Shown: positions 22,983 through 42,379 of the stretch, piece by piece
Numbering within the stretch: the stretch's first letter is position 1
Layout of the letters: every line of letters begins with the position of its first letter
Made by a program: the position numbers and the translations under genes
Notes under the pieces: model-generated
Seen by the model: the letters and a program-made list of their open reading frames with translations, nothing else
Told to the model about the DNA's origin: nothing
Databases searched by the model: none
Assembly (NCBI GenBank): GCA_009103225.1
Contig: RHPI01001412.1
Coordinates: 101,840 to 165,839, forward strand
Direction of reading: 5' to 3'
Length of the DNA: 64,000 bases
From: Chlorokybus atmophyticus
Lineage: Eukaryota > Plantae > Mesostigma and Chlorokybus algae

Positions 22983-23321
22983 TGTAACGGTGTGCTACCT
23001 CCATAGAGGTTCCCCGCCCTTATTTAGGATTAAATAAGGGTCCCAACGGGATTATACAGCCTATTAAGCCTTATTAGGGCCGTTAACCTAGTGTTAAGGC
23101 CCTAATGTAGTGTTACTTAACTATAACACTGATATCGACATGAGACATGAGTCTCATGTGGATATCAGCTGCATGGCGGCGCTGCTAACGCAGCGGCCGC
23201 CATAGCCAGAGCATCTTGTGCTCTGGCAACTGCCCCGGCAGTGGCGGCGGCGGCGGCGAGGCTGGTGGTGGTGTTGGGGTAGGGGATTAAAGGGAGGAGG
23301 GGCACACCCTCTCTCCTGACA
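22983..23321 (+). repeat. 3' LTR of chromovirus copy A
   Basis: Direct repeat of 16487-16825, followed by TSD GTGCG. Confidence 0.97.
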
Positions 23322-23444
23322 GTGCGAGTAGCTTGTAGCTGGGTAGAGGCGGCGGCGGCGGTGTTCGTGGCGTCGTAGGTGAGCAGCACAAAAGCACGGT
23401 TGATTATGTGAAGGAGTGCCAGCAGAGGAGAAGGTGTGTCGCAC

Positions 23445-23471
23445 GATCCGGGGGGACAACTCGTGGACGGA
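23445..23471 (+). repeat. Left terminal inverted repeat
   Basis: gatccggggggacaactcgtggacgga. Confidence 0.93.
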
Positions 23472-23905
23472 AATGTTGTTGACACATCGCATGTTATTCT
23501 TGTTTCTTGACAACAGGTACCACCTTGTTGGAAAACGTTTGACAACAGTTGCGCAAACATGTTGCAGAAACTTTGCCAACTGCTGCACATAAAGGTTACA
23601 ATTGCACATGTCTAACAAGGGTTGTGTGAAACGTGAAGTTGGAATTATCTTGCCAACTAATGCACATAAAGGGTGCAATTTCTTATGTTCAAGGAGGGTT
23701 GTGTGAGTAGTGATGTTGTATAAGTTTTGCCAACATCATGCCTCATATGTTTTGAAAGGCATGTCTTACGCGGAAGTGGCAACATGCACTCGCTGCCGTA
23801 GTTGGCCACGATTGGCCAACAGTGTGGAGGTCACAATGAACAAACACACAAATCTAGTCAACTGTTCGACTGTGCTGTTGACACTGTGTGTGATCATGTA
23901 AGCTA

Positions 23906-26810
23906 TTACAGCACATCTAAAATCATCTCATGATACTTGTCGGGAATTACAAAGACAGACTCCTTAATCTTTTTCCATGTCATTCTGGACGAGTTGCATC
24001 TCTCTTGCTTCTGCTTTCGGCTCTCTCGTTCCATCGGAAAACGTGCTACGCACCTCAACAGGCTAACCGATAATCTGGCAGGCTTTTGTGGCTGAGGCGG
24101 TAGGAAACATAGGTACCTCCTGGAATATTCTGCCGCTGTCACAATCGAGTCATCAACTCTGCGGAAGTAGACTCCTGTGACGTATAGTGTGTCTGCAGGT
24201 ATGATGACTCCATAAGCGTCGGGCCGCATAGCCGTGGATTTACTCGTGGCGACTTGTTTAGTCAATTGCAAAACCCAATAAGGTGCAGAGGCCTCATATT
24301 CATCGGAGCTCTTATCCGCAGCCACCACAAATGTGTCTCCGACGCTCAAGGAAAGCGCCAGCGCCTCCTGGTTTAAGTATAGCAACTGCACATAGCACAA
24401 GTTAGATAACGATGCTCAACCCAACGCATAAGCCTAGCACTCACATCTTGCTCAATCTCTTCTCCGTCTTCCTCGCTTGCAATCAGCTTTTGTCGTAGCC
24501 ATCTAGGAACGTGAGACTTGTTCAGGCAATGGCTGTAATCTTCGTCTAGGCAGCTGCTGAAGAAGCATGAAAACCTTCGCGAGATAAATCGGTCAACTTC
24601 TCCGGTTCCTTTTATGCATTGAAATTGTTGAGTGCCTGGTACTAAGCGATAGGAGCGCCCTGTCTTGTCATGATCTACTTCATGGAGCTCAACAAGATGC
24701 ACAAACCGCTTCTGAGCTTTGGCTTGCTCTTCACGGGCTGCGTATGATGACTCGGCTCCTCGGCTAAGCACCTGTTGCGCGTACTGAACTATAGTTGCAG
24801 CATCCACTATTTCGGCACTTTGCTCGCTGGCCCTATCCAGGTGCCGTTTCAGTGTCCCTCCTTGACCGTCATGTTCACCCTTGCCATGTTGCGGGCAAGG
24901 ATAATGCCATTCCATATGAACGGTGTTGAGCTCGTTTGCTTCTGTATGCATGGATGTCATATAAGCAGCCGGAGCGCTATATTGAGCAACTTGCGCAAAA
25001 TGGTTGGCACACTTATACTGGACTGCACAGTTGTCACTCCAGCTGATGACCTTTTGCATGTCTATCCCTCTCTCTCTGTAGTCTCTGAGAAGCCGTTTCA
25101 AGCAATGGTGAACAAAGAAGGAGTCTTTTGAAGATCATCCGATATCCAAAAATGAACATGCAATGTAAAATCCGGTAAGCCGCTGATGATCTTGTTGATC
25201 TGTTGGTAAAACTATGCCAACTTGGCATAGTTTGTCTGCTTGTTGAACAAGCAGGCTTATGAGCGTACCTCTTTGACGCGTATCGGCTGGTCGTCTGTCG
25301 ATGTCTCACCATCTACATGCTCTTCAGCGTGACGGTAGATGAGTTGCACCAAGCTCACCACGGAGCGGTTTGCGAAATGCTGCTGCATGAGCTCGTTGTT
25401 TGGCTTGAAAGCGTAATTTTCGGAGAAATCACTGATGCTGACGATCGTGCCTTGACAGAAGGTCTGTAAGCACTGCCTTTGCTGCTCCGCTTACCACTGC
25501 GACAAGAACGAATGGAGCTTGAAGTCCTTCAGCTGCTTCTGCAGGCGGCTGATAAAGTCAACAAAGGTCATGGGCTGCTTGAGAAAGTCTACTCTTGCGT
25601 ACTCGGTGGCGGCTTCACCGTTCTCCGCTTTGCCTGGTTGCATGCGCTTTACGTAGAGCCTAGGCTGTAGCAACTGATGCTTTTCTGATCGCTCTAATGG
25701 ACATGTCGGGAACTTAATCCATCCGCAGTGAGGGCAGTCTCCAGTGATGCAGAGGTGGTTGTAGTAAGCGCTGTCCGTTTCCTTAGTGCAAGAAGTACAG
25801 TCACGCAGGCCGGTGACCGATGAACCCGACAGTGGTGAGTCCAGCAAACGGCACTTGGTGTAAAGTTGACATCTGCAGCGGTGTCGGCAAGTGCAGTCTT
25901 TTTTGACCTACATGCACGGCTGTTACCAGATGCATAGCTTTGATTTACACAAGCTCTTACCGTAACATTCATACCTGACACGCATCGCATGGGCATTTAC
26001 AATGCGCGTGCTTTCTCTGCCGGAACTGAGACAAAGCCATCACAAGCTCTTTCATCTCAGTATGCTGCGAACATACGCACACATGTCGAACGTCGCGTCC
26101 TCCTACATAGTATGGCTTGACCTTCTAAAAAACTCGTTGATGCACGTCGATAAGTGGGTTCTCAGCTCGGAACTTCAAGTAAAGTGCCGTTTGTGTCGTG
26201 CCTTCTAAAAAACGCTTGGTGACATACTCGCCAGCTAATCGTTTACCAGTGGACATACGCAACAACATCTTATCACGCTTGCATGCAGACTCTCTGGTGT
26301 TGAGGATCCAAAAGTCCTCGATCTGTTGAAAAATCTGCGGTGTCACCTTGTCTTTGCGTGCACGACGCCCTTGAGTGCTCCAGTCGTCCAGGTACGTTAC
26401 TTCTTGATAAAACCTTTGACGACGTATCTTGAGCACTGAAGCAACCTCCAAAATTCGCACCGACCTGCTGTCGCCAATTGCTGATCTTGCCGCTTTCATC
26501 AGAACATTCCTTGCCGTTCTATGCGCATTGGAGCGGGAGCTCTTGATGCTGTTGTATGCCGACTTGAACATGTTAGATATCGTTCTGTAGGCAGGAGCTC
26601 TTTTGACGACTTCCAAATAGCTATCTTGAGCGACGGCTGCTGCATTCTTGGGTGCTTTCAGCAGGGATCTCAAAATGTCTGCTTTGATGGTGTCATCTCC
26701 TTGACAGGTCTGTTCTAGTACCTCCTGCATGGCGGCAACTGACTGCTTGACCTGGTATTCCTTTGCTCTTTGTCGTCCGCGTTGAGACTGGGATCCATTA
26801 TTTGCGGACC
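23906..26810 (-). pseudogene. Sola2-like DDD transposase, spliced, disrupted
   Basis: KVKPYYV...CVCSQH; CITGDCPHCG; DFSENY (25413-25430); ISDD; WSDNCAVQYK (WSDNC 25027-25041); HGKGEHDGQGGTLKR (HGKGEHDG 24865-24888); RRFSCF..CL...C.N..HV. In-frame stops (F*KVKP at 26125-26127, QW*AEQ near 25491) and at least two frameshifts. Confidence 0.82.
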
Positions 26811-27859
26811 TGCCAGGAGATGGCAAAACTTTACCAACAACACAGGCTGTGCTGGTTTGACCGCCAAAATAGCTGACCTAACTTGAGGCTAGATTTATCC
26901 AACTACACGGGCAGTGCGGGCAAGAGGAGATGTTGTATTGTGCGCTGATGCAGGTATCATCGCAGTTGTTGGCAAACCTTATCCAACAACAACAAAGGCT
27001 ATGCCATGCTATCGACCCCAAACAAGGCGGGGTCACCGTCTTGCGGCACGCTCTATCAAAGCCTTAAGCTCAAGTCCGCGAAGTTAGTACATTTGCCAGT
27101 AGGCCAAAACGCTAGTTGGCAAATTTTGCCAACTAGCGTTTTGATGACGCTGACGTGCACAGAGCATATGGCACAACCCTTGTTTGCAGCATGCGTTATG
27201 ACCCATTTTGCCAACTTTGAAACCTTCAAGTGCATATATGGACACAGACAGCATGCAATGCACATTGCAAAAGACTGGTGGTGCCATACCTCTGGCTTTG
27301 ACTATGCACCATAGCCAGCCGCCATGCGGCCGTAGTTGAACGATAGCCTACTCCGCTGCTTGTTGTCGCACCCTTCGAAATCACAAATGTAGACGCAACA
27401 ACTGCGCACACAGCAATGCGTCACTACAGCACTGCATGTAGCGGCACCACTTGCAATTGCGTTCAACAAAGCCTACACACACATAGCAAAAACACATGCC
27501 TACCTCACACCTACCTTGCTTTCAATTGGCAACAAACAAACAGCGGACCTGCCTGGACCTGCCTAAGCGCAGCAGCATAATATGACTGCACAAGCAACGG
27601 ACGTGTACAGCAGCTGAACATCTTGACATATGGTTCGTATGTGGATGCTAGCATTCACGTTGCTCACCAGCTCTCACACACAGCTGGACCTGCCTTCGTG
27701 CAGCATAAAACGCACCTGATCCATGCAGTTCTCACCAGCCCTGCGCCAGCTCTCTCAACCGCCTAGCCAGCAGCCAGCATTGTGGCGCCACCGCCTACAT
27801 TGTGACTAAGCAAAGGAGAAGCGCACTACTCTAGCCTGGCAAAGACGACCCAGCTGACC

Positions 27860-28533
27860 CGCCGCCCTCGCCGCCGCCCCCGCCGCCACGCCCGCCGTCG
27901 CCGTAGTCGCAGTGTAAGCTAGCATGCAAGCAGAAGCTCAGCTAGCTCCGAAGCTGCTGGTAGCATGCTTAGGGTTCCTCCCCACTCCCCAACTCGCTGT
28001 TGCACACCGTGTATGCCAAGCCACCCCTCCCACACCATCAACCCAAGGCTCAACACCTCTGGCAGCAACACGCACTAGTACACATGCATTGCTCAGCTCA
28101 CAGCACACGTTGCAACTTTGCATGCCTGCCTCACGCAACTTGGGCACCACACAAGTAGGCACCCAATTTTGGCTTGCGCGTAACACCCGTAGGGTAGGAT
28201 ATAAAACTCTTGCACATGAGTTCCAATTAACATAACACTTGGCACATAAAGTCTTTATTGCAGCTGGAGCACGTTGCAAAAAAACTCATGCAGAATAATC
28301 AACCGATGCAATTGTTATTACGAACAAAAGTTTGGGGTTATTTAGCGAAGGTCATTACGTAGCACCCTGGTATGTCACATGCAGCTTGTGCAAATGATGT
28401 TAATATAACATGAAATGAGAAATAGACTCTTCATTGCATCAGAAATACGGTGCTGTGGTCGGTGACAACGGCGGCGACGGCGGCGTGGGCGACGGCGGCG
28501 TGGGCGACGGGGGCGAGGTGCGGGCGGTGAGCA
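27860..28533. promoter_or_regulatory. Putative bidirectional promoter/leader region between the divergent transposase and cargo genes
   Basis: Mirror-image GC-rich GGCGGCGAC/GGCGTGG tracts: minus strand about 27860-27905, plus strand about 28467-28528, the latter just before the cargo ATG at 28534. Confidence 0.45.
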
Positions 28534-29641
28534 ATGATGGGGCGACCCAAGCAAAAAGCTGCGAAGGACAGCCAAAAGGAGGCCAGTCAAGCCACCGAGG
28601 AAACGACGATAATAAGGTGAGTTGTTAAGCTGTTTAGCTTTGTTGCGTAGCAGCTTGGTTGTTAGCTGTTGTAGCTTTAGACAGCAGAAGTTGCTATGCA
28701 CAACTGTTCCAAAGCATCAGCTACTACTAACGTCTTCTAGCAGAGTTGCCAGCAGCACAAACATGCATGTCCGTGCTACTGGCAACTCTGCGGCAACATG
28801 CATGTCCGTTGCTGCTTGACAACTTGTTCAATGCAGCAGAGTTGTCAAGTAGCAATGCCTGGGTTTGTAATTGGTTTGTAATTGAACCCTTCTGCTGTTC
28901 ACTGCTGCTCACAACTTGTTGTATTAATTGCAGCAGAGTTGCCAGCAGCACGGACATGCATGTTGCTGCTAACAACATGCCTGTTCGCTGCTGCTTGACA
29001 ACTTGACAAATTCAGATTGGTGTATGCTTTGTACATGTTGTCGCAAGCACGCAGCACGCATATGTTTTGCTAGACAGAGCTGCATACAGCTGCTGGTGCA
29101 TGTGGTGCAGCCGAATTGCCAACATCACAGCATGGACACGCGGTGCTGCTGGCAATTCCGCAACATGTGTGCAACAGTTGAATGTGTGCATGTCAGGAGA
29201 GAGGGTGTGCCCCTCCTCCCTTTAATCCCCTACCCCAACACCACCACCAGCCTCGCCGCCGCCGCCGCCACTGCCGGGGCAGTTGCCAGAGCAAAAGATG
29301 CTCTGGCTATGGCGGCCGCTGCGTTAGCAGCGCCGCCATGCAGCTGATATCTCATGTCTCATGTCGATATCAGTGTTATAGTTAAGTAACACTACATTAG
29401 GGCCTTAACACTAGGTTAACGGCCCTAATAAGGCTTAATAGGCTGTATAATCCCGTTGGGACCCTTATTTAATCCTAAATAAGGGCGGGGAACCTCTATG
29501 GAGGTAGCACACCGTTACATTCCCCCCCACTTAGGTTTCAATGTCCTCATTGAAGGGTTAGCAAAGCCCCATCACGAGTCACAAAACGAAAGCAGTGAGA
29601 GAACCAGGGCCGAAGCGGTAAAGATGTCTGCCAGCACCCTT

Positions 29642-32600
29642 TTACCGTTCGCGTGTGGACACAGTACTCCAGTACCCCCGAAGAACCTCTTGGCAGTTGG
29701 TAAGATTCCTTTCGGGCTCCCATGTATTGTGTTCAACACCATACCCTTTCCATTTCACCAAGTAGGACGGCGCGCGTCCGCGTCGAGGCTTACGGTGACT
29801 TAGGATTGCTTCCACCTCATACTCAAATGTATTGTCACCATCCACTGCGACTGGGGGTGGAGGAGGTTGAACCCGACCGTCTGATCGGTACGGTTTCAGT
29901 ACACTCACATGAAACACATTGTGAATTCGTATCGACATTGGTAAATCCAAACGATACGCGTGAGTGCCGACCCGATCAATCACTTTGAAAGGGCCTATCC
30001 AGCGAGGGAAAAACTTGCGGGTACCCACTCCCTTGATGGATACGTTTTTGGTACTTAAAAGCACCGAACAGCCCACATCGTAGGTGGCCTCTCTACGATG
30101 CGCATCAGCTTGGGCTTTTTGTCTGTCTTGCGCTGCGCGCAGACAGTCTTTTGCCAACGCTAACCTATCCTGCATGGCCGAAGCCATCTCGCGCGCTGCA
30201 GGTACGCGAGTTATATCGGTTGCGGGCAATTTTAAATTCGCAGGACTCAGTGGATGCACGCCGTAATTCAAGAAGAACGGAGTCTCCTGCACACTCTCTT
30301 GCCATGCATTATTGATCGCAAATTCAGCCATTGGGAGATAAATATCCCAATCACTCTGATTCGGGCTCACATAATGCCGGATGGTTTCCTCAATCACTTG
30401 ATTGGCGCGTTCTGTTTGACCATCCGTCTGTGGATGGTAAGCAGTGCTCATGTTCTGCTGAATGTGTAAGAAGCTGCATAGCGACTTCCAAAACTGAGCC
30501 ACAAATCGCGGATCGCGATCTGACACGAAGTTGCGGGGCAAGCCATGCAACTTGAACACAGACGCGACAAAAACCATCGCCAACTCACGGGAGCCTATCT
30601 CCGTGCGACAAGGGACAATGTGGACCATTTTTGTTAAACGATCCACGAAAACTGCAACCGCAGTGTGACCTAATGCTGTCTCTGGGAGCTCAGTAATTAA
30701 GTCCATACTCACACTTTCCCATTTGCCATCAGGAACAGGCAAAGGTCGCAGCAACCCAGCGGGTTTCTGACGTAACGGCTTGTCACGCTGACATTTGTCA
30801 CAGGTGTCAACATAACGCTTTACGTCAACAGGCAACGATGGCCACCAGTACAGCTGTTGCGCTGCCTTGGTAGTCTTGCGATTTCCAAAGTGCCCAGCGT
30901 ACGGTGGGTCGTGTACATCAGCTATGCATTGCATGCGTAGCCCAGCATGGTCAGGTATCACCAAGCTAGCACCCATATAATACAAGTTGTCTCGTGCTTC
31001 AAGCTGTTGTATATTCTCTTGCCGTGAGAACCATGGGTCTAAGGAATACCCATGCAAAACAGATTGCACAAATGCATCATTAGCGGGCAATGTAACTTGC
31101 GTCGCAAGCAATTGCGCACGCATAACTGCCAATAATGACGGACAGCGACTTAAAGGATCTGCCACATTAGTTCTGCCAGGCCGATATACCCATTCAAAAG
31201 TAAATCGCGACAGAAACTCATTCCAGCGAGCTTGCCTACGTGACAAGGTCAGCTGCGTTGAGAAGTATACTAATGGGTTGTGATCAGTCACCACTGTGAA
31301 CTGAACTCCCTCTAAGTAACATCGCCAAGTTTCGAGAGCATGTACGACACCAAGCAACTCTTGCTCAGTAGTAGTGTAGTTTACCTCCGCTGGGATAAAC
31401 TTCCTACTTTCATAAGCACATGGTCTGCCGTCTTGCAGTAGTACTGCACCACACCCAAGGGTGGAAGCATCACTGACCACAGTGAAATGTTTATCCCAAT
31501 TTGGCAATGCCAATACTGGAGCTGAAGTTAATGCTAACTTCACTTGTTGCATAGCAGCTTCTTGGTCTGACGTCCAAGAAAATGGCGCGTCCTTTCGCAA
31601 CAATTTAGTCAAGGGCATTACAACTGTAGAATAACCCATCATAAATTTGCGAAAATAATTTGCCAATCCCAAAAATGATCTCAGTTGATGAATATTTTTG
31701 GGTTGAGGCCAATTCTTGACAACTTGCACCTTGCGAGGGTCAGGCTTTACACCCGCACCACTCACAACATGTCCCAAGAATGGTAACTCCGATTTGCAAA
31801 AGTCACATTTTGCAAGGCTGGCAAATAAATGATGCTTCCGCAACAAAGTAAACACCGCTTCTAAGTGTTGCTTATGTTCCTCTTTGGTTTTACTAAAGAC
31901 AATAATGTCATCCAAGTAAACCATAACATACTTGCCAAGTATATTACCGAAAATTTTATTCATTTCCTTCTGAAACACAGCAGGCGCATTCGTCAATCCA
32001 AAGGGTAGCACTTTGTATTGATAATGGCCCGAAGGTGTTCTGAAAGCTGTCTTATAGACATCAGCGGAATGAATTCGGATCTGATGATATCCACTTGTCA
32101 GGTCTAATGTACTGAAGTATGCATTACCTGATAGTTTATCAAACACGTCATCAATCCGTGGCAACGGGTATCGATTTTTCACCGTGATTTTGTTTAAAGC
32201 ACGATAGTCCACACACATGCGCAATTTTCCATTCTTTTTCATCACAAATAGGATGGGTGCGCCAAAGGGTGAAGAACTTGGTTCAATCAATCCTTTTTCC
32301 AATAACTCCTTGATTTGTGTTTCCATTTCCCCCCTTTCTCTAGGGCTTAGCCTATATATTGGCCGAAAAGGAGGATCACTATCAGGAATTAATGGTATAG
32401 TGTGTCCGACACCTCGGTCAGGAGGCAAGCCCGGCAACTCATCTGAGAACACATCTTGATATTCCTCAATGAGGTCTGCCACACCTTCAGTACTACCCGG
32501 CGCAATGTCATCTGATGAAGACAAATGTACCAGAAAAGCCGGTGTGTTTTTGCGCAACGCACGTTTCACCTGTAGTGCCGTGAGTAACGCAGGGTCGGGT

Positions 32601-33412
32601 TGCTTGAATTCCAAGCTATGCGACCCTTTCACAGACAATGTAATCCGCTTACCGCCTTTCTTTACTGTGCACAAGCGTGCACCCGTATCCAATGTCATTG
32701 TGACATTATTTTGCCATTCTTGGCCTAGTACCACATCAACACCAGATATGTTGATTGCTACTACTATAAAGGCAAGATTGGCATAATAATTACCAATTTT
32801 AACCTTCAATTTTACTTCTCCCGTCACTGGCAATGTACCCCCAGCACCGGCAGCCGAAAATGCTGAGGGTTTGCGCATGATTTTATTGCGCGCAACCCAT
32901 TGCTCGTCCACGAAGTTGTGTGTCGCACCAGTGTCAATCAAAAACGAGCTATTCACACCTTGCATTGTGCCACTGAATGTCCACAACAAAGGTACCACTC
33001 GTCCTTGAAAGGTAGCCAAGAATCCGTGACTAATGCGGGGGTTGATTAATATTGCTGATAATCGAATTGTCCCAGTCTCGCGCTTGGTGAATTGTTTTAA
33101 AACAGTACCCCCTCGAGTATACTTCAACCATGGGCCATGATATTTTGGCACCATTGCTACCACACTCAGGGATCTGTGTTTACATTGCAATTCACTCAAT
33201 GTGTGCAACACGTCGGTAAGCATGTTAAATTTCACATGTACCAGTACACAAGTATTTGCTTCCACTGTTGCAACATCAAACAGTGGTAACTTGTGATGTG
33301 TTTGCCATGCATGCGTCATTACATGCATTTGAGACAGATTATCAAACCAGTTAACTGCTTGTATCTCAAGCAACTGACTATCAACCTTTGCTACATCAGC
33401 CACAGCGTAATC
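29642..33412 (-). CDS. pol of chromovirus copy B
   Basis: Open frame identical to the copy A Pol except R/G in SIK[R/G]VGTRK. Confidence 0.96.
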   Translation of the reverse strand, partial: DYAVADVAKVDSQLLEIQAVNWFDNLSQMHVMTHAWQTHHKLPLFDVATVEANTCVLVHVKFNMLTDVLHTLSELQCKHRSLSVVAMVPKYHGPWLKYTRGGTVLKQFTKRETGTIRLSAILINPRISHGFLATFQGRVVPLLWTFSGTMQGVNSSFLIDTGATHNFVDEQWVARNKIMRKPSAFSAAGAGGTLPVTGEVKLKVKIGNYYANLAFIVVAINISGVDVVLGQEWQNNVTMTLDTGARLCTVKKGGKRITLSVKGSHSLEFKQPDPALLTALQVKRALRKNTPAFLVHLSSSDDIAPGSTEGVADLIEEYQDVFSDELPGLPPDRGVGHTIPLIPDSDPPFRPIYRLSPRERGEMETQIKELLEKGLIEPSSSPFGAPILFVMKKNGKLRMCVDYRALNKITVKNRYPLPRIDDVFDKLSGNAYFSTLDLTSGYHQIRIHSADVYKTAFRTPSGHYQYKVLPFGLTNAPAVFQKEMNKIFGNILGKYVMVYLDDIIVFSKTKEEHKQHLEAVFTLLRKHHLFASLAKCDFCKSELPFLGHVVSGAGVKPDPRKVQVVKNWPQPKNIHQLRSFLGLANYFRKFMMGYSTVVMPLTKLLRKDAPFSWTSDQEAAMQQVKLALTSAPVLALPNWDKHFTVVSDASTLGCGAVLLQDGRPCAYESRKFIPAEVNYTTTEQELLGVVHALETWRCYLEGVQFTVVTDHNPLVYFSTQLTLSRRQARWNEFLSRFTFEWVYRPGRTNVADPLSRCPSLLAVMRAQLLATQVTLPANDAFVQSVLHGYSLDPWFSRQENIQQLEARDNLYYMGASLVIPDHAGLRMQCIADVHDPPYAGHFGNRKTTKAAQQLYWWPSLPVDVKRYVDTCDKCQRDKPLRQKPAGLLRPLPVPDGKWESVSMDLITELPETALGHTAVAVFVDRLTKMVHIVPCRTEIGSRELAMVFVASVFKLHGLPRNFVSDRDPRFVAQFWKSLCSFLHIQQNMSTAYHPQTDGQTERANQVIEETIRHYVSPNQSDWDIYLPMAEFAINNAWQESVQETPFFLNYGVHPLSPANLKLPATDITRVPAAREMASAMQDRLALAKDCLRAAQDRQKAQADAHRREATYDVGCSVLLSTKNVSIKGVGTRKFFPRWIGPFKVIDRVGTHAYRLDLPMSIRIHNVFHVSVLKPYRSDGRVQPPPPPVAVDGDNTFEYEVEAILSHRKPRRGRAPSYLVKWKGYGVEHNTWEPERNLTNCQEVLRGYWSTVSTRER

Positions 33413-34879
33413 CTATTCAACCTTCTTGGCTTTGCCCTTCGCCTTCGTAGGACAGGCCTTTGCAACGTGACCCGGCTGATGGCAGATGAAACAGGTGCGA
33501 GCTGCAGTAGGTGCATTACCAGCAGACGTACCACCAATTCGAGGAGCGAATGTCTTCGCTTTCTTCGCCACATGTACACTCGGCGGAGGATAGCGCTTTA
33601 TTCCCCCCCCTTGCGGCTTGGCCATAGCTGTCACGTTCGACTTTTCCTGCACGACCGTGTCATCATTGTACAGGTAAACACTTAGCTTTTGCAGCTTGGC
33701 CAAGTCATCAGGAACCCAAGGAAGCCCCGTTGCAGTGTTGTACTGCAGCTGATCGCGAACACGCGCATCCAAGCCACGCTTGTACAACTCGAACTGCTCA
33801 GCTTTGTCCATAGGCATCAGGCCGCTATTGGCACGACCAACTAATGCTTGGAACTCCTGCAGATACACTGATGCTGCTCGACCATTCTGTCGCAACTTGC
33901 TAAGTTTGTTACGAGCCTGAGTAGCCGGATCCATGCCACCATAGCGCTCCATCAGAAACTGAAACAGTGCTGGTACTGTCTTCACAGCGCCATGCTCTGT
34001 TTGTCGTGCCCACTCGGCGAGAGCATCAGATGGCATAAGCAACTCAGCAACGGCAACGTGCTCACCCACCGGGCGCTTTAGCGCTGTCAGGTAATGTTCG
34101 ACAGTCACCACCCAATCATGGATACTTACACTACCGTTAGGCTTGAACTTTTCAGGTTTGTTCAATGCCGTAACCGGCAGCCCCACTGATGCGCCAACTG
34201 ATGAAGCAGCACCCGCTACTTGCTGACGCAGCGCCATCAACTCAGATTGCATCGCATCGAGGCGTGCCTCCAACTTCACTCGGCCAGCCAACTTATTTTC
34301 CAAGTTAGGTCCCAAGTACCAGAACACATCCTTGCAACGCTGCTGCGTTTCAACCATCAAGTTGGCTAAGGCCTCAAACGCCATCCGCTTCCCTTCGTAT
34401 GGGAGCGGCCTATCGTAGACGGCCATCAGAGCAGCCACTTTTGGATCACCACGCACGAGTGGCGGAACATTGTTCGTCAACTCGTGCTCAATCATGCGGA
34501 TCACCATCTCCTTACTAGTGCGAGGGAGAGTGGCAAAATCTGTTTCATAGCCATTACGAACCTTCTGCGCCCATGCATCCCACACTTCTTGACGAAGCTG
34601 CGGGTGGGCGTCAAGTAAAGTCTTGCGCTCGCGCGCATACTTTTCAATGGCTCCGCCAATGACACTCGGTGTGTCCATTACAGCTGGCTCACTGTGGGTA
34701 GACAGGTCGGGGGAAGCTTCGCTATCTTGCTTAGCCTCTTCTTCCTTGTCACTGTCAGTGAGCTTATAGCTCTCACTCGTGTCCGAGTCCCTCACTTTGT
34801 CATCACTGGATGGCTCATATGAGGATGATGAATCAGGGACGGTGAAGTACTTTTCACCTCCCTCTCCTTGGTCAGACAT
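33413..34879 (-). CDS. gag of chromovirus copy B (from MSDQGEG)
   Basis: ATG present; capsid-like WVVTVEHYL..., CCHC knuckle; ends in a TAG in frame with pol. Confidence 0.92.
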   Translation of the reverse strand: MSDQGEGGEKYFTVPDSSSSYEPSSDDKVRDSDTSESYKLTDSDKEEEAKQDSEASPDLSTHSEPAVMDTPSVIGGAIEKYARERKTLLDAHPQLRQEVWDAWAQKVRNGYETDFATLPRTSKEMVIRMIEHELTNNVPPLVRGDPKVAALMAVYDRPLPYEGKRMAFEALANLMVETQQRCKDVFWYLGPNLENKLAGRVKLEARLDAMQSELMALRQQVAGAASSVGASVGLPVTALNKPEKFKPNGSVSIHDWVVTVEHYLTALKRPVGEHVAVAELLMPSDALAEWARQTEHGAVKTVPALFQFLMERYGGMDPATQARNKLSKLRQNGRAASVYLQEFQALVGRANSGLMPMDKAEQFELYKRGLDARVRDQLQYNTATGLPWVPDDLAKLQKLSVYLYNDDTVVQEKSNVTAMAKPQGGGIKRYPPPSVHVAKKAKTFAPRIGGTSAGNAPTAARTCFICHQPGHVAKACPTKAKGKAKKVE

Positions 34880-36404
34880 CTGCCCAAGGATAACACTGTT
34901 CAAATAGTGCACAAACACGGAAAGTTGTGCACTATGAAAACGTCGAATACTAGTGATTTTGTCCTGTCAAGTTTGGAGGGGTAAACGTGGAGTATTCAGC
35001 CCAAACAAGAGCTCTCCACACACCTCTCAACTAGACAATCACTGTGCAACAAACCGCACGCGAATGCACGCGACGGCTCACGAGCTATGGCTGCTCAAAG
35101 TTTTCACTTTGTACAACCCAGCTCAACTTACAATCACAATTGACACCCAAAGTGCCAAAATCTCGTTGAATCAGCCCTACAGGCCGATATCGACAAGTTG
35201 TGAGTTGTGAGTTTGATATCGACCGCACAGAAAAATTCTGGCGGCCTCACCGCACTGACTGGCGGTACCGAGACAGTCGATGTTGCCACCGAACTGCCCC
35301 CAAGGGAATTTATCCAAAAAAATAGATAAAAAGCCCTTCACCACCACGAATCCACGTGGTGGTTAGCACACAAAGATTATAGTAAACAATATATGATTAC
35401 TATGTTATGTGCTTGGATGCAATGCTTCAGGGAGGGGCCTGGATGGCCGCCCCCCTTCACACAATAACAACTAAACTAGGACAAGTTAGGCATGGCATGG
35501 CATGGCATGCATAGGCTAGGCTAGGCTAGGCTAGGCACCAGCAGCAGCGTTTAACTACAACAGTTAAACCAAACAAAACTTTTAACTACCGCTAGTTTGC
35601 CGCCGCAGTGCCGCCTGCCGACGCAGTGCCTGCCGCCGCCCCTGCAGTGCCTGCCGCCTGCCGCCGCCCCTCCCACAGGCCCCTTGCCGCCCGTGCTCCG
35701 ATACCAATGTCAGAAGAGAGGGTGTGCCCCTCCTCCCTTTAATCCCCTACCCCAACACCACCACCAGCCTCGCCGCCGCCGTCGCCACTGCCGGGGCAGT
35801 TGCCAGAGCAAAAGATGCTCTGGCTATGGCGGCCGCTGCGTTAGCAGCGCCGCCATGCAGCTGATATCCACATGAGACTCATGTCTCATGTCGATATCAG
35901 TGTTATAGTTAAGTAACACTACATTAGGGCCTTAACACTAGGTTAACGGCCCTAATAAGGCTTAATAGGCTGTATAATCCCGTTGGGACCCTTATTTAAT
36001 CCTAAATAAGGGCGGGGAACCTCTATGGAGGTAGCACACCGTTACAGTGCACGAGTTAGTGTTGGGGTCTTCATGCATTGCGCTATGCTTTCGCGTTGTT
36101 AATGGTTGTTGCAGCTGAAGTAGACAATTACTAACATTTTGTGGCTCTGCAGAAACACAAGGGCGAGCGGCATCAAACGCAAAGCGGAGGCCAGCAGCAG
36201 CCGTGCCAAGGAGGCAAAGAAGAAGCGGGCAGGGTTTATGTAAGTATGCTGATCAGTTGCATTGCTGCTTGCTGCATTGCTGCTGCATTGCTGCTGGGCT
36301 ACCGCTGGTCTACAAACTTGTTACAAGAATCTACCGTATCAAGGCCAGCGCTGTGTATAGAATATTCTTATATTGAGAGGGGCTCGCTGTTCTCTGATGG
36401 AGCC

Positions 36405-36592
36405 GCCAGCAGGGCTGTTGGTCTGCCTGCTCTTGCGTGTTGGCCAAATTTTGCCAACAAGCAAAAGCAACCAGCATATAGCTGTTGGTTTTCCTGCTCT
36501 TGCATGTTGGCCAAATTTTGCCAACGAGCAAGAGCAGCTAGCAGGGCTGTTAGTCTGCCTGCTCTTTTGTGTTGGCCAAATTTTGCCAACTG
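36405..36592. repeat. Three tandem copies of about 65 bp in intron 2 of the cargo gene, each containing GTTGGCCAAATTTTGCCAAC
   Basis: Visible units ending in tgttggccaaattttgccaac near 36438, 36505 and 36570. Confidence 0.85.
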
Positions 36593-39500
36593 GTCTCAGG
36601 CTTTGCTGCCAAATTTACTTACTGAAACAATTGTTCTATACCTCTTGCTATTGCAGTGATCCCCTCAAAGATAAGTTGCGAGCCCCTCAAAGAGAAGTCT
36701 CCGATAACGATGACGACGATGACAGTGTACCTGAGACGGACGACAAACAGAGCAATCCCGATCTTAACTCTGGCGATGAGTTAGATCAATATGACGAGCT
36801 TAACGCCGAAAACAAAGCTCTGGAAAAAGGAGACTACCACTGTAACTTTGTTGACGGACTTCCTGCTATAGTTGTAGCAGAACTTTTAGTAACAATACAT
36901 GTAACTGCAGGGAACACGATCCATGTCAGGCATGGCTCCTTCTGGAAGAAGTTCGAAGAGCTTGAAGATCTACGCGAGCTGTTCAAAGGAGCTGCTCGAA
37001 AAATACACAATCTCGCCAAGTGGGAGGCTGCAAAAGAAAAAAATGAGACCAAAGATAAGCAGAAGACTGTGCGTTACTATCTGACAGTCACAAAAGAGGT
37101 CAGTCATGTCGTCTGTTAACGCTGGTTATTGACTATTCTCAAAGGTAATTGATCAATTCCTTGTTTGTTGCTGAACGATCATTGGTCCGAGTATCGTCTC
37201 ATGTATGCATGGTCTTTCTCACCAAAGGAAGTCCGAGTGCTTGTCATCCCATCGAGCGTGCCAGACCCAGATGACGAGTTTCTTACCGATCGCAAGACCT
37301 TCCTGTTTGATTTGCCGGTAAACAAAGCCCATTGGACACCCACCGGGAAAAAGCTGGTCAGTCTAGAGAACGGCAAGGATCTTTCTGACATGATGATCAA
37401 GGACGTCACCAAGGCTAATAATCCACCATTGCTTGTCAATCTGTACGAGTCTCTGCAAGGTACGTTCACTATGTGCTGTACTTCCCACCAAACCCCGCTC
37501 CAAAACATCCTGACGATTTATCAATTGCTGCAGCAATGACAGCAAAGACGCTCAACTTGAGTGCTGATCCCTCTCAGCTGCCGTCGCCAAACAAAAGAGG
37601 CAAGGGCAAAGCACCAAAGACTAAACCGGTCATCCCTACAGACACGGAGGGTGCAGCAGGTACGCAGTGTCTTCAGAACACAATGCCTCACTGCATGTAC
37701 AAGTTGACAAAACTTTACCAACTGTGCAGGCGATGCTCTGCCACCCATTATACTGCCGCCCCTGTTCTCCAATGTCGATACACATACGTACAAAATCAGC
37801 CTGTCAAGAATGCGTTCAGCAGAGGGGGCACATCAAGCGCGCAAAATTGAAAAATCCAGGCTGGTCTATCTGGAACAGGCTATGAGGAGCGGCTACAATA
37901 AAGGGCACAAGCCATGGCTTCTGCTGGCTTACAGAAATGACAAAGGACGAGAGATGCCTGTCAAGGAGGAGTATTTCAATAAATACCACATCGACCGCGC
38001 AAAAGACTTTACCTATGAGGTGCTCGGCGGCAATCATTCGTTCATCGTCGCATCCAAGCTAGCCAAGGAGCAACCAAATAATGACTGGCTACAGTTTGAG
38101 TGGTGTGAGGTATGCTAGCTTATAGCACTTGTTGCATTGCAAAAATTGAACAAAAAAAAGCAAGCTGAATCTGTTCCCTGCACAGGTAGTGTCCGGGCTA
38201 ACCGACGAGCAGGCCCATCTGTACGCTAGACAGCACAACGAGCAAGATGACCACAAAAAGCCATCCACATTTGTGACCAAGGTGGCCACATTTCGTGACA
38301 AGTACTTCACGCGCGGAAAACCCGCCAAGCCAGTAGTTGGGCCAGGCTCAGACAAGTATTCAGCTGGCTGGAAGGCTTGCTTGTTGGATCTGGCCTTGCT
38401 CATGGACAATGAAATTTAGTGGAAAGGCAGAAACTATCAGCTGATTTCGAGAGAATACAGAAGTGAAATCGCGTAAGTTTTGTTTGCGTACATTATGACT
38501 CTGCAGAATGTTGTGTTGTTCTCGCAATCGTCATCAACCTATGCAGGCTGGCGGTCAAACTGCCACTGACTGAGGAGCAGTACGAACGCTTTTTTCAAGT
38601 CCTTGATGATGTTGATGACATCGACAAGCCATTGCCTCGTCACACCTTGGAGCTGTTCACTCATCTATCAGGAGAGCAGATCATGAAGGTGTTGGATGAC
38701 ATCGAAGCTGGCACCATCGATGTCAGCGTGCATTGTGAGTTCAAGCCTTACCACCTAAATGAGCAACGCAAAGGACGCTTTGTGTCTTTTTTGGCATGTA
38801 AAGTGATACCAGGCGAGGTCTTTGAAACATCTGGGTAAGCTAGCACATGCAAAGTTATGTCTGTTCATTGCAGGTATGTATAGCAGTAACCATTATCAAC
38901 AAAGTCATCACTGTCATCAGGTGTGAAAGTCGTTTGGCGGATCAGGCGCCAGAGTTGTATGCAGCCAGAAACCAGCTGTTTGAGGTCCTTCTCAAGGGAG
39001 GTCATAACCTCTTCTTCAAGCAGCTCACAAGCGTCAAAGCTGATTTAGAGTCGAAGCACTCAGTCAAGCATCTGAATATCCCATTCGCCATCATGGACAA
39101 AGTCTGCCAGCTTGGCAAGATACCGCTTTCAGAGCCCCGTCAGGTCGGCGACGTCCCCGGCGCCGTGGTTATGCCCTTGTAAGTATGGAGCTGTGTTGTC
39201 CAAATTTTACCAACAGGTGCTCAATGCAGCCATACTATATCTCTATGCTTGTTACGCAGGCGTTTTCCTGTGCACGCTAGTGGCGATCGCCCCCAGGAGT
39301 TCCATGCGGTCAAACAGAGATGCGTACCGCGCTTTGAAACTGTGCAAAAATTTGTTCGAGAGCTGCAAGTCAAGGAGTACCCTTCCTTCCCGCTTGTCTT
39401 CTTTGATGTTCCTTTCCACAAGAACGATGACCGCGACAAGGCCTTCACCATCGAAGACTTCCAGGAAATGACTGATGCATTGTGCCGCCAAAACAGCGAA

Positions 39501-41976
39501 CTGAAGTGGTGGACGCTTGTAGCCTTTGTACCTTTGCATCACGTGAGTGCGGTCAAGGGAATCCTGCAAAACTCCGATGCATATATCGTCGAGTTTACTA
39601 CATATACGCACGCCGCTACAAGTAAGTTGTGTCTGTGCAGTTACTGCCTTCGGTATTACAGCTACATTACTGAAAATTGTTATGTTGCGCAGAGCTGCAA
39701 GTGTTCCCTGGCTTATACAAGAGCCAAGACCGGACTGAGCCAGTCCTCATTGCACTTTACAAGCAAGTCGACGACTCTCTAAAGGTCACCAATCTCAAGA
39801 CCTGGTTCAAGCTGCGCGAGCAGGATGACTTTGTCTGGCATGATCCCTCGCATCCTAAGTTCTGCCAGCTGGGACCATACGAGGAAGAGTCGCCAAACGT
39901 GGAGGAGCTGAAGTCTTCTTCACACGGAGCAGAGGAAGATAACGAGATGAATGAGGGCGAAACTGAAGATGAATTGTTGGCTGTCGTTGCTGCAACACCC
40001 TCTGAGATTGACTTTTCAGAAGGCATGACAAAGGCAGCCACAGGAGCTGTGAAGCGCTGGTGGCTCAGCAAGTTCTTCAATGTTGAAGGTCATCCACCTA
40101 TCTGCTGGCAACAACGACTGTGCAGCACCCTGGCCGGAGATTTTCTACCCGCCAGAAAAAGCAACAGCGAAATATGGGTTCTCGACCTCGGTGCTGGAGC
40201 TGGTGGTCTGAGCGACGATGCACTCAAGTTGGGCTACAGCATTTTTGCAGTAGACAACGATTCCACCAGCATGTGCCAGCTCGAGGACCGCTTCTACGGC
40301 TACTGCAGCGAACTCAAGCACTACGTAAGCCAGTGAGTGTTGGTATAATTTTGCCAACAGCGTCATGCTATCTGGAGGTACTTAAATCACTCACTTTACT
40401 GCAACACCTTTTGTTGCAGCAAGAGAAGCATAGCTCACTGCGCTCAGCTGCTGCTAAAGATAACGCCGCTGCCCTGCCACGGATCAAGAGCAAGGACGAG
40501 GTCGTGCAAGATCGCCTGCTGAAATTTTTTCCTAGCATGAACTTCGGCGATGTCAAGCACATGGCGTTTCTTCTGCGCTGGGTTGCTCAACCAGGCACAG
40601 CTGCAATCCTAAAAGACGAGGAAGACACGCTGAAGGACATCAGGGACTACTGTGATAAACGCCGCGCTGACATCCAAAGCAGTAAGCGCAGTGTGTTGTA
40701 TATGTTTGTAGCACACATATGTTCGCTGACTTGATCATGTGCGCAGTGGACAAGTTTACCGAAGTGAGGGGCGATATTATCGGTGCGAATTACCTGAAGC
40801 TTGAAGCGGAATTGCAGTCGACTCCAGATCCGCTAGCAGGGAAGCTCACTCAGCTGGATGTCAACCCAGACTCGGCATCGCGGGTGGTTGCACTCATCAC
40901 GGATGATCAGGGAGCCAGCGACAAAGCTAGAGAACCTGCGCACAATGTTGAGATAACAGCCCAAAAAGATGCAGAGCCGGTGTCGCAGGCGACGCCAGAG
41001 AAGCCAGCGCCAAAGCCAGTGCAAGTGCCAGTGGCAGACACACATCCGCACTGCGCCAGTCCGCTTTGCGACATGCCAATCAGTTTTGACGATCCGACCC
41101 CAACGGTGTGTCGCAATGAAGGCTGTCTCCGCCGCTTATATCATCTCTGCTTCACAGCCTACTCGGGGACTAAGGATGGCAGCAACGCCCGGTGCCCAGA
41201 TCATTGGGTTGAGGCCAACAAGGACAACAAGCTGAAGCAAAGCTGGGTGAACAAGGTTCGCAAGGCTGGTAAGACTGAGGGCGCGCTGAATGTTTGGGGC
41301 TGTGACAAATGCAAGGACTACCGCGGCTGCAGAAAGTGTTTTGGTCCTTTGGCGGTAATGGCCAGCCAGGAGACGCCTAGCCAGGGAGAACTCATGGAGT
41401 GAAAGAGATGTACCCCCATCGCAAAAAAAAAAACGTGTTGTGATGTGCGTGTAGTGGTTGGAATAGTGCCCTGATACAAAGGCATTTGCCCTGTATATAC
41501 AGCCTTGACCCTTGGAGTAGTTTGTACCCTGCCTTGTGACCTTGTTACAAAGATAAATGTTTTGTGCAAATTCTGATCTGCTTGTACAAGCAGCTGTTGG
41601 CAGAACTTTGCCAACACACACATGAGTGCATGCTCATTATCATCACAGTGTAGGCCTAGTTGTATGAATTGTGGTTGGCTTTACTTGACCAACAATGGTG
41701 AAGCTACACTCCTGAAAGCTTACAAGTAGCTGCAAAGAGGCACTAGCTTCATGCATAGTAGTTGACATTATTTTGCCAACAACAGAGAGAGGCTTACACT
41801 CCTGAAGGCATTCAATAGCTGCAAAGAGACACAACAACATCCAAGAGACAAAGCTACATGCATTGCTGATTGCCTGCTTGCATGCTGGTATTGCATGCAA
41901 TTGCTGATGTCAAGCGGCCAGCAAAGTGTTTTAGTTGTCTGCAGATTGCTATCACATCACATGATATGGGAACAAC

Positions 41977-42003
41977 TCCGTCCACGAGTTGTCCCCCCGG
42001 ATC
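41977..42003 (-). repeat. Right terminal inverted repeat
   Basis: tccgtccacgagttgtccccccggatc is the exact reverse complement of 23445-23471. Confidence 0.93.
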
Positions 42004-42379
42004 GCACGACACGCCAGAAGCGTTGCCGAGGCAATGCCAAGGAGCCAGGCAGCAGCAGCAGCAGGAGGAGTGTTGACGCAGAGCCTGGTGGTGTCGGCTA
42101 GCCAGCAAGCCACATGACGCCAGCAGCAAGGGTAGGATAGCAAGCATGATTCACTGTGTGCCGGTGTGTTGCACAATGCTAGTGAAGTTTCTGAGTATGA
42201 GTATGAGTATTAGCAGCCCTGTGCCAAGGCGTTGCCAAGGCAGGAACAGCAGCATAAAGCGCAGGAGGAGGAGGACTAGGTAAGGATGGTGTGCTGCGCA
42301 AGCTTTGCTAATGAGGTACATAACCGTACAACGGCATGTCTTGATGGTTACATAATTGCAACAACAGTGCCGGGACAAT

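What the first reader, a model, noticed from the sequence alone, without database searches (positions are those of the whole stretch)
37730..41402. ParB/Srx + beta-class 6mA/4mC methyltransferase + PHD-like reader in one protein
Seen after manual splicing, in order: a ParB-like core (ISLSRMR..ARKIEKSRLVYLEQAM...YEVLGGNH...GLTDEQAHLYARQHN); motif IV-like LVFFDVPF; EPVLIALYK; an acidic variable insert; GHPP..WQQRL; motif I VLDLGAGAG and IFAVDND; a Cys/His finger; and a CxxC-x5-CxxC tail. Known: the motif IV-before-motif I order defines beta-class amino-MTases (D/N/S-P-P-Y/F). Bdelloid N4CMT is a eukaryotic beta-class MTase joined to a chromatin reader. Inference: a chromatin-guided 6mA or 4mC writer. 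The DVPF variant (Pro to Val) could be active or degenerate, while the SAM-binding motif looks intact.
Basis: partly seen in the sequence, partly recalled or inferred. Interest (0 to 1): 0.88.

Follow-up and report, generated by a model that had tools for sequence, protein, structure and literature searches.

The report
Transposon-borne ParB-like methyltransferase cargo gene
A 13-exon gene inside an 18.6-kb cut-and-paste transposon encodes a protein of about 1,366 residues that joins a ParB-like part, a rearranged DNA-methylase-like part and zinc fingers. Such transposon cargo is already published for algae, this copy has a stop codon, and the enzyme call rests on weak similarity.

Summary
The only break is a TAG at 38417-38419.

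The gene is the cargo of a transposon at 23433-42015 with terminal inverted repeats (TIRs) and a 4-bp target-site duplication (TSD), AGAA. It runs divergently from the transposase gene and has a gypsy element nested in its first intron.

No sequence search found a relative, and AlphaFold2 models of single exons were too poor to use. Weak lines of evidence agree on a circularly permuted (beta-type) amino-methyltransferase:
- Protein-language-model neighbours of the DVPF exon are N6_N4_Mtase and MT-A70 fragments.
- Each half aligns with the correct half of a beta-class profile (P 0.02 and 0.009).
- No motif IV lies downstream of motif I.

ParB-like is supported by language-model neighbours only. 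PHD is not supported.

I also found 18 copies of a 20-bp palindrome, all confined to the non-coding parts of the element.

The kind is published: Ectocarpus Sola1-1 carries ParB plus an N4C/N6A methylase, and red-algal PAG2/PAG3 are comparable. This scan has already reported sister copies elsewhere in the same genome. It is a new, very divergent member of a known kind.

The parts
23433..23477 (.). Left terminal inverted repeat of the host transposon; the flanking 4-bp target-site duplication AGAA is at 23429-23432
   Evidence: 45-nt arms, 89% complementary to 41971-42015. Alignment and AGAA on both flanks.
41971..42015 (.). Right terminal inverted repeat; AGAA target-site duplication at 42016-42019
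23909..26877 (-). Exons of the presumed transposase gene, divergent from the cargo gene. Other notes of this scan call it Sola2-like; I did not test that.
   Evidence: Long stop-free stretches on the minus strand. No Pfam hit and no homologue.
28537..28616 (+). Proposed exon 1 of the cargo gene (MGRPKQKAAKDSQKE..., basic), with a GTGAGT donor
   Evidence: It is the only ATG-started stretch with a strong donor and the phase that exon 2 needs. Inferred.
29191..36046 (-). Nested Ty3/gypsy LTR retrotransposon inside cargo intron 1; 5-bp target-site duplication GTGCA
   Evidence: LTR pairs, gag and pol ORFs, TG..CA ends and GTGCA on both flanks.
36153..37659 (+). Cargo exons 2-5 (36153-36239, 36657-37098, 37228-37459, 37534-37659): basic NLS-like stretch, acidic run and an uncharacterised region
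   Evidence: Splice sites and phases. No family hits.
37730..38472 (+). Cargo exons 6-7 (37730-38109, 38186-38472): ParB-like core (YEVLGGNH; GLTDEQAHLYARQHN)
   Evidence: Language-model neighbours are an unnamed eukaryote cluster (0.95), DUF3723, ParB_N and DUF6551. HMM searches and hhalign are not significant.
38417..38419 (+). In-frame TAG, the only break in the 1,366-codon frame
   Evidence: The contigs of run X1 show no other letter there.
38547..39178 (+). Cargo exons 8-9 (38547-38834, 38921-39178): helical linker; a possible ParB-type HTH (LSGEQIMKVLDDIEAGTIDVS)
   Evidence: hhalign places it on the HTH of phage ParB proteins, but P = 0.12. Inconclusive.
39260..39621 (+). Cargo exon 10: catalytic-half candidate (helix, LVFFDVPF strand and loop, helix, WWTLVAFV strand, helix, YIVEFT strand)
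   Evidence: Atlas neighbours N6_N4_Mtase 42/100 and MT-A70 11/100. hhalign to beta-class columns 8-130, P 0.021. AF2 order of secondary-structure elements at pLDDT 46.
39693..40324 (+). Cargo exon 11: EPVLIALYK strand, ~100-aa acidic insert at the position of a target-recognition domain, GHPP..WQQRL (motif X-like), VLDLGAGAG (motif I), IFAVDND (motif II)
   Evidence: Methyltransf_25 E 0.02. The best PDB hits are SAM methyltransferases, E 0.3-1.3. hhalign to beta-class columns 202-289, P 0.009, reached by 0 of 80 shuffles.
40420..41402 (+). Cargo exons 12-13 (40420-40690, 40747-41402): linker that looks helical by eye (not tested), low-complexity stretch, Cys/His cross-brace-like finger (41049-41207) and a C-x2-C-x5-C-x2-C knuckle (41298-41339); stop at 41400-41402
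   Evidence: Only ZZ at E 0.04. No PDB hit.
36400..36590 (.). 67-bp tandem repeat x2.9 in cargo intron 2; each unit carries the exact palindrome GTTGGCCAAATTTTGCCAAC
23527..23820 (.). Left subterminal cluster of five copies of the 20-bp palindrome. Further copies start at 25202, 26819, 26968, 27115, 37703, 39195 and 40339.
41596..41780 (.). Right subterminal cluster of three copies of the palindrome

Best explanation
This is the accessory (cargo) gene of a TIR-bounded cut-and-paste transposon, transcribed divergently from the transposase gene.

Shown:
- The 13-exon structure.
- The element's ends and its target-site duplication.
- The single stop codon.
- The palindrome array confined to the element.

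Inferred, with moderate support: the product is a nuclear protein in three parts.
1. A ParB-like N-terminal DNA-binding module that lacks the arginines of the ParB GxxRxxA box.
2. A circularly permuted (beta-type, N6_N4_Mtase-like) amino-methyltransferase. The catalytic half (strand 4 ending in D-V-P-F) precedes an insert, which is followed by the SAM-binding half (HP.., VLDLGAGAG, IFAVDND).
3. C-terminal zinc-binding modules.

Inferred, weaker: intact copies write 6mA or 4mC on DNA. The ParB-like module may direct them to the 20-bp palindrome TGTTGGCnAAAnTTTGCCAACA that is seeded through the element's subterminal regions and introns. The transposon would then mark its own DNA.

This particular copy is probably not functional. 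It has a TAG at codon 527 and a 6.9-kb gypsy element in intron 1.
For: Gene model:
- 12 GT..AG introns with consistent phases give one 4,101-nt frame.

Transposon context:
- 45-nt TIRs and an AGAA target-site duplication.
- Transposase-like exons on the other strand.

Methyltransferase:
- Every named language-model neighbour of the DVPF exon is an amino-methyltransferase: N6_N4_Mtase 42, MT-A70 11, mixed 4 of 100.
- The C-terminal half has generic SAM-methyltransferase neighbours and hits.
- hhalign against 18 beta-class methylases, six of them confirmed as PF01555, is collinear: P 0.024, reached by 3 of 120 shuffles.
- Each half maps to the matching half of that profile: P 0.021 (2 of 80 shuffles) and P 0.009 (0 of 80). 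Two other parts of the same protein served as controls, with P 0.43 and 0.08.
- The only GxGxG is at residue 1014, and no (D/N/S)xP(Y/F/W) motif lies after it.
- The AF2 model of the exon gives helix, strand, loop, helix, strand, helix, strand, with DVPF at the end of a strand.

ParB:
- Neighbours score 0.90-0.95 and include ParB_N.

Palindrome:
- 18 sites, all inside the element, none in the nested gypsy, none in exons, none in the other ~45 kb. Shuffles give about 0.3.

Published parallels:
- Ectocarpus Sola1-1_Ec32, with ParB plus an N4C/N6A methylase encoded opposite the transposase (PMC12477816).
- Bostrychia PAG2 (PF01555+SET) and PAG3 (ParB-like+2OG), with inverted-repeat arrays beside the gene.

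From general knowledge: Erm/KsgA N6-adenine methyltransferases use N-(I/L)-P-Y, so a non-proline at the second position need not kill catalysis.
Against: - No HMM is significant. Pfam and PHROGs gave nothing on the exons, and my own beta-class HMM scored -0.3 bits.
- HH-suite gave a probability under 2%.
- The AF2 models are of low confidence, pLDDT 46 and 31. Foldseek on the first returned only generic alpha/beta folds.
- An exhaustive phmmer search of 1.84 billion representatives with exon 11 found only spurious repeat matches.
- Word-index and contig searches found no relative.
- ParB is not supported by hhalign: P 0.12, reached by 14 of 100 shuffles.
- D-V-P-F is not the canonical motif.
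- There is no RNA evidence.
- Another agent of this scan read a sister copy as an ordinary class I methyltransferase.
- Subterminal palindromes could equally be transposase-binding sites.
Confidence: 0.55

Rival explanations
1. The methyltransferase-like region is a degenerate pseudoenzyme. The fold or its remnants are kept as a scaffold or SAM/DNA-binding module, and the protein acts only as a DNA-binding accessory factor of the transposon, for example in tethering, segregation or transposition control through the palindromes.
For: - D-V-P-F replaces DPPY.
- The ParB box lacks its arginines (LGGNHS).
- No HMM recognises the domain.
- This copy carries a stop codon, and a sister copy is also noted as stop-broken.
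Against: - Motif I and the acidic motif II look intact.
- Only one stop occurs in 1,366 codons, so decay is recent.
- Erm/KsgA-type N-(I/L)-P-Y enzymes are active (general knowledge).
Confidence: 0.22
2. It is an ordinary, unpermuted class I SAM methyltransferase acting on a protein, RNA or small molecule. The domain would begin at VLDLGAGAG, and the upstream DVPF would be a chance look-alike.
For: - The only near-significant family hits are generic: Methyltransf_25 at E 0.02 and PDB class I enzymes at E 0.3-1.3, all on motifs I-II.
- The atlas neighbours of exon 11 are generic methyltransferases.
- An earlier agent reached this reading on a sister copy.
Against: - Downstream of motif II there is only a ~90-aa linker that looks helical by eye, then low-complexity sequence and zinc fingers. 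That leaves no room for strands 3-7 and no motif IV.
- The upstream exon independently has N6_N4_Mtase and MT-A70 neighbours.
- The upstream exon aligns to the catalytic half of the beta-class profile.
Confidence: 0.1
3. The palindromes are transposase-binding subterminal repeats with no relation to the cargo protein. The cargo protein would then find its targets in some other way, or have none.
For: Eight of the 18 sites cluster within about 420 bp of the two TIRs, spaced roughly 34-87 bp apart. This is typical of subterminal transposase-binding sites.
Against: - Ten sites lie deep inside the element, in introns of both genes, including a 3-copy tandem array.
- ParB proteins bind palindromes of similar size (general knowledge).
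- Published Plavaka elements have inverted-repeat arrays next to their ParB-like gene.
Confidence: 0.4

Closest known systems
Ectocarpus Sola1-1_Ec32 accessory protein (1104 aa; ParB-like + N4C/N6A DNA methyltransferase; Genome Biol 2025, PMC12477816)
   Same: - A large intron-bearing gene on the strand opposite the transposase in a giant Sola-superfamily DNA transposon.
- ParB-like plus PF01555-type methylase.
- Its authors already propose that it binds and modifies its own transposon.
   Different: - That element is Sola1 in a brown alga, and its methylase domain is recognisable by standard tools.
- Here the element is called Sola2-like (untested) and no HMM sees either domain.
- The motif here is DVPF, and the protein is longer and ends in zinc fingers.
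- I could not fetch the Ectocarpus protein for a direct comparison.
Red-algal Plavaka accessory genes PAG2 (PF01555 + SET) and PAG3 (ParB-like + 2OG oxygenase), Bostrychia moritziana (bioRxiv 10.1101/2025.02.11.637652)
   Same: - Transposon-borne ParB-like and beta-class methylase modules.
- Arrays of inverted repeats beside the ParB-like gene.
- The same idea of self-modification.
   Different: - There the two modules sit on separate proteins with other partner domains (SET, 2OG).
- The host elements are Plavaka, Zisupton or Mutator.
- Here the palindrome is dispersed through introns and both subterminal regions, not only placed next to the gene.
'Chlorophyte-type Dam' family 2 with N-terminal ParB-type HTH (Iyer, Zhang, Aravind 2016, PMC4738411)
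   Same: A ParB-type module fused N-terminally to an adenine-methylase-type domain in chlorophytes.
   Different: - That clade is Dam-like (group 2). Dam-type enzymes have motif I before motif IV (general knowledge).
- Here the only GxGxG follows the only plausible motif IV.
- I made no direct comparison.
Bacterial and phage PF01555 (beta-class) methylases, including those of ParB-terminase loci
   Same: - Motif order IV...VIII, insert, X, I, II.
- An HP.. motif about 30 residues before VLDxxxGxG.
- Collinear hhalign alignment.
   Different: - Similarity is below every family threshold.
- DVPF replaces (D/S)PP(Y/F).
- The gene is eukaryotic, spliced and has 13 exons, with a 100-aa acidic insert.
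Bdelloid rotifer N4CMT (bacterial-type N4C methylase fused to a chromodomain)
   Different: - N4CMT is a host gene that silences transposons and has a recognisable methylase domain and chromodomain.
- Here the gene is carried by the transposon itself, and no chromatin-reader domain is demonstrable.
DUF3723, an accessory gene of fungal Starship giant transposons
   Same: - It is the best named language-model neighbour of the ParB-like exon (0.94, 179 shared features).
- Both are accessory genes of giant eukaryotic transposons.
   Different: - This is a lead only. Pfam DUF3723 does not hit the exon.
- No held paper links DUF3723 with ParB.

Membership tests
Beta-class amino-methyltransferase (Pfam PF01555 N6_N4_Mtase) | Circular permutation: the catalytic motif IV lies N-terminal to SAM motif I, with a variable insert between them | tested here: met
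   DVPF is at residues 776-779 and the only GxGxG at residue 1014. No (D/N/S)xP(Y/F/W) follows it in the model, and no (D/N/S)PP(Y/F/W) occurs in any + frame down to the stop.
Beta-class amino-methyltransferase (Pfam PF01555 N6_N4_Mtase) | Canonical (D/N/S)-P-P-(Y/F/W) at the end of strand 4 | tested here: not met
   The motif is D-V-P-F (39405-39416), with the first proline replaced by valine.
Beta-class amino-methyltransferase (Pfam PF01555 N6_N4_Mtase) | Family HMM above threshold | tested here: not met
   No PF01555 hit at E <= 1 on any exon. PHROGs gave none. My own HMM of 18 members scored -0.3 bits on the spliced protein.
Beta-class amino-methyltransferase (Pfam PF01555 N6_N4_Mtase) | Profile-level collinear similarity of both halves | tested here: inconclusive
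   hhalign P 0.024 for the whole region, 0.021 for the catalytic half and 0.009 for the SAM half, each on the matching half of the profile. Atlas neighbours of the catalytic exon are PF01555 and MT-A70 at 0.85-0.87, which counts as a lead only.
Beta-class amino-methyltransferase (Pfam PF01555 N6_N4_Mtase) | Rossmann-type seven-strand fold in a structure model | tested here: inconclusive
   Only single exons could be folded, and without an alignment. They gave pLDDT 46 and 31. Foldseek returned only generic alpha/beta folds with E > 0.03.
Beta-class amino-methyltransferase (Pfam PF01555 N6_N4_Mtase) | Methyl transfer to N6-A or N4-C of DNA | not testable with these tools
   This needs expression of an intact copy with LC-MS, or SMRT/nanopore methylation calls.
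ParB/Srx N-terminal domain (PF02195) | Family HMM or profile similarity | tested here: inconclusive
   No Pfam, PHROGs or PDB hit. hhalign against 8 phage ParB proteins gave P 0.12. Atlas neighbours at 0.90-0.95 include ParB_N, DUF6551 and DUF3723.
ParB/Srx N-terminal domain (PF02195) | Arginine-rich GxxRxxA box (CTP binding in canonical ParB) | tested here: not met
   The aligned stretch reads LGGNHSFIVA, with no arginine. The alignment of this motif was made by eye.
PHD finger | C4HC3 with spacing C-x2-C-x(8-21)-C-x(2-4)-C-x(4-5)-H-x2-C-x(12-46)-C-x2-C, and a family hit | tested here: not met
   The pattern found is C-x4-C-x13-C-x4-C-x5-H-x1-C-x14-C-x2-H. There is no PHD hit; only ZZ at E 0.04 on the last knuckle. 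There is no PDB hit.
ParB-methylase accessory genes of giant algal DNA transposons | The gene lies between the TIRs of a DNA transposon that has a target-site duplication, on the strand opposite the transposase | tested here: met
   TIRs at 23433-23477 and 41971-42015, AGAA duplication, transposase-like exons on the minus strand.
Sola2 superfamily element | Sola2-type DDE transposase | tested here: inconclusive
   No Pfam hit and no homologue was found for the transposase exons. The 4-bp duplication is compatible with Sola2 (PMC3627910). The name comes from other notes of this scan.

The most novel reading that the evidence does not exclude
The transposon carries its own address system. The ParB-like domain would read an element-specific 20-bp palindrome, kept out of exons but seeded through introns and both subterminal regions. 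It would thereby deliver a permuted amino-methyltransferase to the element's own DNA. Other notes of this scan report sister families in the same genome, each with a different palindrome. If that holds, reader and site co-diversify, as ParB and parS do or as restriction-modification specificities do.
Probability: 0.3. Interest if true: 0.7.

Novelty: new member of a known kind. Interest (0 to 1): 0.4.

Why it matters
Transposon-encoded writers of 6mA or 4mC would be a way for mobile DNA to set its own epigenetic state in eukaryotes. The published cases (Ectocarpus Sola1-1, red-algal PAG2/PAG3) are all untested predictions.

This element adds three things:
- A member so divergent that standard domain tools miss it.
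- A non-canonical D-V-P-F motif that tests what the active site tolerates.
- A well-defined 20-bp palindrome array, which gives a concrete and cheap binding and methylation assay.

It is not a new kind of system, and this copy is broken.

Tried and rejected
- **Pfam and PHROGs** on every exon gave nothing significant.
- **Exhaustive phmmer** of exon 11 against 1.84 billion representatives gave two hits. Both are artefacts of 'QDD(L/I)(I/V)WH' in GBS_Bsp-like repeats.
- **Word-index searches** with the ParB exon and a transposase exon found nothing. A third search, with E. coli YhdJ, returned only close YhdJ kin of 68% identity or more, too narrow for a profile.
- **Contig scans** of viral and metagenome collections with three exons found no relative.
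- **PDB sequence searches** gave only generic motif I matches, and nothing for the ParB exon or the finger.
- **AF2** could be given single exons only, because spliced sequences cannot be passed by reference. Both models were poor, and Foldseek on the better one was uninformative.
- **RNA evidence:** the only run holding the stretch looks like low-depth DNA, with no joints.
- **hhalign of the ParB region** against phage ParB proteins was not significant.
- **Other candidates for motif IV**, NIPF at residue 693 and NNPPL at residue 268, were considered and set aside. They lack a preceding hydrophobic strand, and hhalign did not choose them.
- **An alternative donor** at 38383 (CTT|GTTGGA) would skip the TAG and stay in phase. 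It is weak, and nothing supports it.

Full report
**What is there**

The + strand between 28.5 and 41.4 kb holds a series of stop-free stretches in changing frames. They join through canonical introns (GTAAGT, GTACG, GTATG, GTGAG or GTCAG donors; CAG or AAG acceptors). Eleven introns are 56-417 nt. Every phase fits, which gives 13 exons and a 4,101-nt frame of 1,366 codons.

All the quoted motifs are at the stated places.

The frame has one defect, a TAG at 38417-38419 (codon 527) inside exon 7. The strong donor GTAAGT at 38473 and the phase of the next exon show that the exon runs through it.

Exon 1 (28537-28616) is inferred from phase and donor strength only.

No transcript evidence could be had. 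The single public run that holds the stretch gives low-depth contigs that cover the introns as well, with no joints.

**Context**

The gene lies inside an element bounded by 45-nt inverted repeats at 23433-23477 and 41971-42015. AGAA flanks the element on both sides. On the minus strand at 23.9-26.9 kb are the exons of a large protein with no Pfam hit and no detectable relative. Other notes of this scan call it a Sola2 transposase. I could not test that.

A gypsy retrotransposon (29191-36046, 5-bp duplication GTGCA) sits in cargo intron 1. Without it the element is about 11.7 kb, the size that other notes give for sister copies.

**Searches for relatives**

Nothing in public protein or contig collections resembles any exon:
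- Exhaustive phmmer of exon 11 gave only repeat artefacts.
- Word-index searches were blank.
- Viral and metagenome scans were blank.
- Pfam, PHROGs and PDB sequence searches gave no significant hit.

**Is it a beta-class amino-methyltransferase?**

The evidence comes from several weak lines that agree.

1. Exon 11 carries a standard motif I/II (VLDLGAGAG...IFAVDND). It gives the only near-hits, all to SAM methyltransferases: Methyltransf_25 at E 0.02 and PDB entries at E 0.3-1.3.
2. Downstream of it there is no room for the rest of a Rossmann fold and no motif IV.
3. Upstream, exon 10 has protein-language-model neighbours that, where named, are all amino-methyltransferases: N6_N4_Mtase 42, MT-A70 11 and mixed 4 of 100, at scores of 0.84-0.87. 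The tool rates such scores as leads.
4. I built a profile from 18 beta-class methylases: E. coli YhdJ, 14 phage enzymes and 3 YhdJ kin. Six of them were checked as PF01555. A plain HMM scores -0.3 bits on the spliced protein.
5. hhalign gives a collinear alignment that puts LVFFDVPF on (D/S)PPY, GHPP on HPxxKP and VLDLGAGAG on VLDPFxGSG. P is 0.024, reached by 3 of 120 shuffles.
6. Taken apart, the catalytic half aligns to profile columns 8-130 (P 0.021, 2 of 80 shuffles). The SAM half aligns to columns 202-289 (P 0.009, 0 of 80 shuffles). Two control regions give P 0.43 and 0.08.
7. AF2 on exon 10 alone (pLDDT 46) gives helix, strand, loop, helix, strand, helix, strand, with DVPF at the end of a strand. 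The model is too poor for a fold search, and the model of exon 11 is useless.

I put the permuted amino-methyltransferase reading at roughly 0.65-0.7 and actual DNA-methylating activity of intact copies at about 0.4.

D-V-P-F is non-canonical. Erm/KsgA enzymes work with N-(I/L)-P-Y (general knowledge), so the motif does not decide the matter.

**ParB and PHD**

The ParB-like exon has language-model neighbours at 0.90-0.95. These are an unnamed eukaryote cluster, DUF3723, ParB_N and DUF6551. No HMM supports it, and hhalign is not significant (P 0.12). The box that carries arginines in ParB reads LGGNHS here.

The finger has eight Cys/His residues in a cross-brace-like order, but its spacing is not that of a PHD finger and it has no family hit. 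The tail is a plain four-cysteine knuckle.

**A further feature**

A 20-bp palindrome, TGTTGGCnAAAnTTTGCCAACA, occurs 18 times (5 mismatches or fewer).
- All copies are within the element.
- None are in the nested gypsy, in any cargo exon or in the remaining ~45 kb of the window.
- Shuffled sequence gives about 0.3 copies.
- Five lie near the left end and three near the right end.
- Three exact copies form a 67-bp tandem array in intron 2.
- The other seven lie in introns or non-coding DNA around both genes.

They are candidate sites for the ParB-like module or for the transposase.

**What is known**

The Ectocarpus transposon study describes a 1104-aa protein with ParB-like and N4C/N6A methylase domains. 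It is encoded opposite the transposase of the 21.5-kb Sola1-1_Ec32 element. [quoted passage not shown]

In Bostrychia, Plavaka elements carry PAG2 (PF01555+SET) and PAG3 (ParB-like+2OG), with inverted-repeat arrays next to PAG3.

Iyer et al. list a chlorophyte Dam-type family with an N-terminal ParB-HTH.

This scan has also reported sister copies in the same genome. They come with conflicting readings of the methylase class and with other element-specific palindromes.

**Verdict**

This is a real, nearly intact cargo gene of a known kind. It is very divergent, and its enzyme assignment is plausible but unproven. The palindrome array is the most testable addition.

Noticed in passing
window 23527-41780 (18 sites; exact copies at 36439, 36506, 36571): A 20-bp palindrome, TGTTGGCnAAAnTTTGCCAACA, is confined to the non-coding parts of the transposon. 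It is absent from the nested gypsy, from the cargo exons and from the other ~45 kb of the window. Shuffles give about 0.3 sites.
   Followed up: yes
window 29191-36046 and 20000-23324: A gypsy LTR retrotransposon with a 5-bp duplication GTGCA is nested in cargo intron 1. At least 3,152 nt of it are 100% identical, in inverted orientation, to a second copy that ends about 110 bp before the left TIR. This points to very recent activity or a duplication.
   Followed up: partly
window 37732-38109: The best named language-model neighbour of the ParB-like exon is DUF3723 (0.94, 179 shared features), an accessory gene of fungal Starship giant transposons. No held paper links DUF3723 with ParB. This is a lead towards a shared ParB-like accessory module in giant eukaryotic transposons.
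   Followed up: partly
window 36657-37659 (cargo exons 3-5, residues ~57-323): About 270 residues N-terminal to the ParB-like part match no family. They comprise an acidic run, then a region rich in hydrophobic and charged residues. They include an NNPPL motif at residue 268, which I did not pursue.
   Followed up: no
window 38383 and 38417-38419: A weak donor (CTT|GTTGGA) 34 nt before the TAG has the same phase as the main donor. If used, it would skip the stop and remove 30 residues. There is no evidence that it is used.
   Followed up: no
window 39830-39900 (EQDDFVWHD): This short stretch of exon 11 produced misleading multi-stretch phmmer hits to bacterial GBS_Bsp-like repeat proteins, which contain 'GQDDLIWH'. 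The hits are a chance match, not homology.
   Followed up: yes
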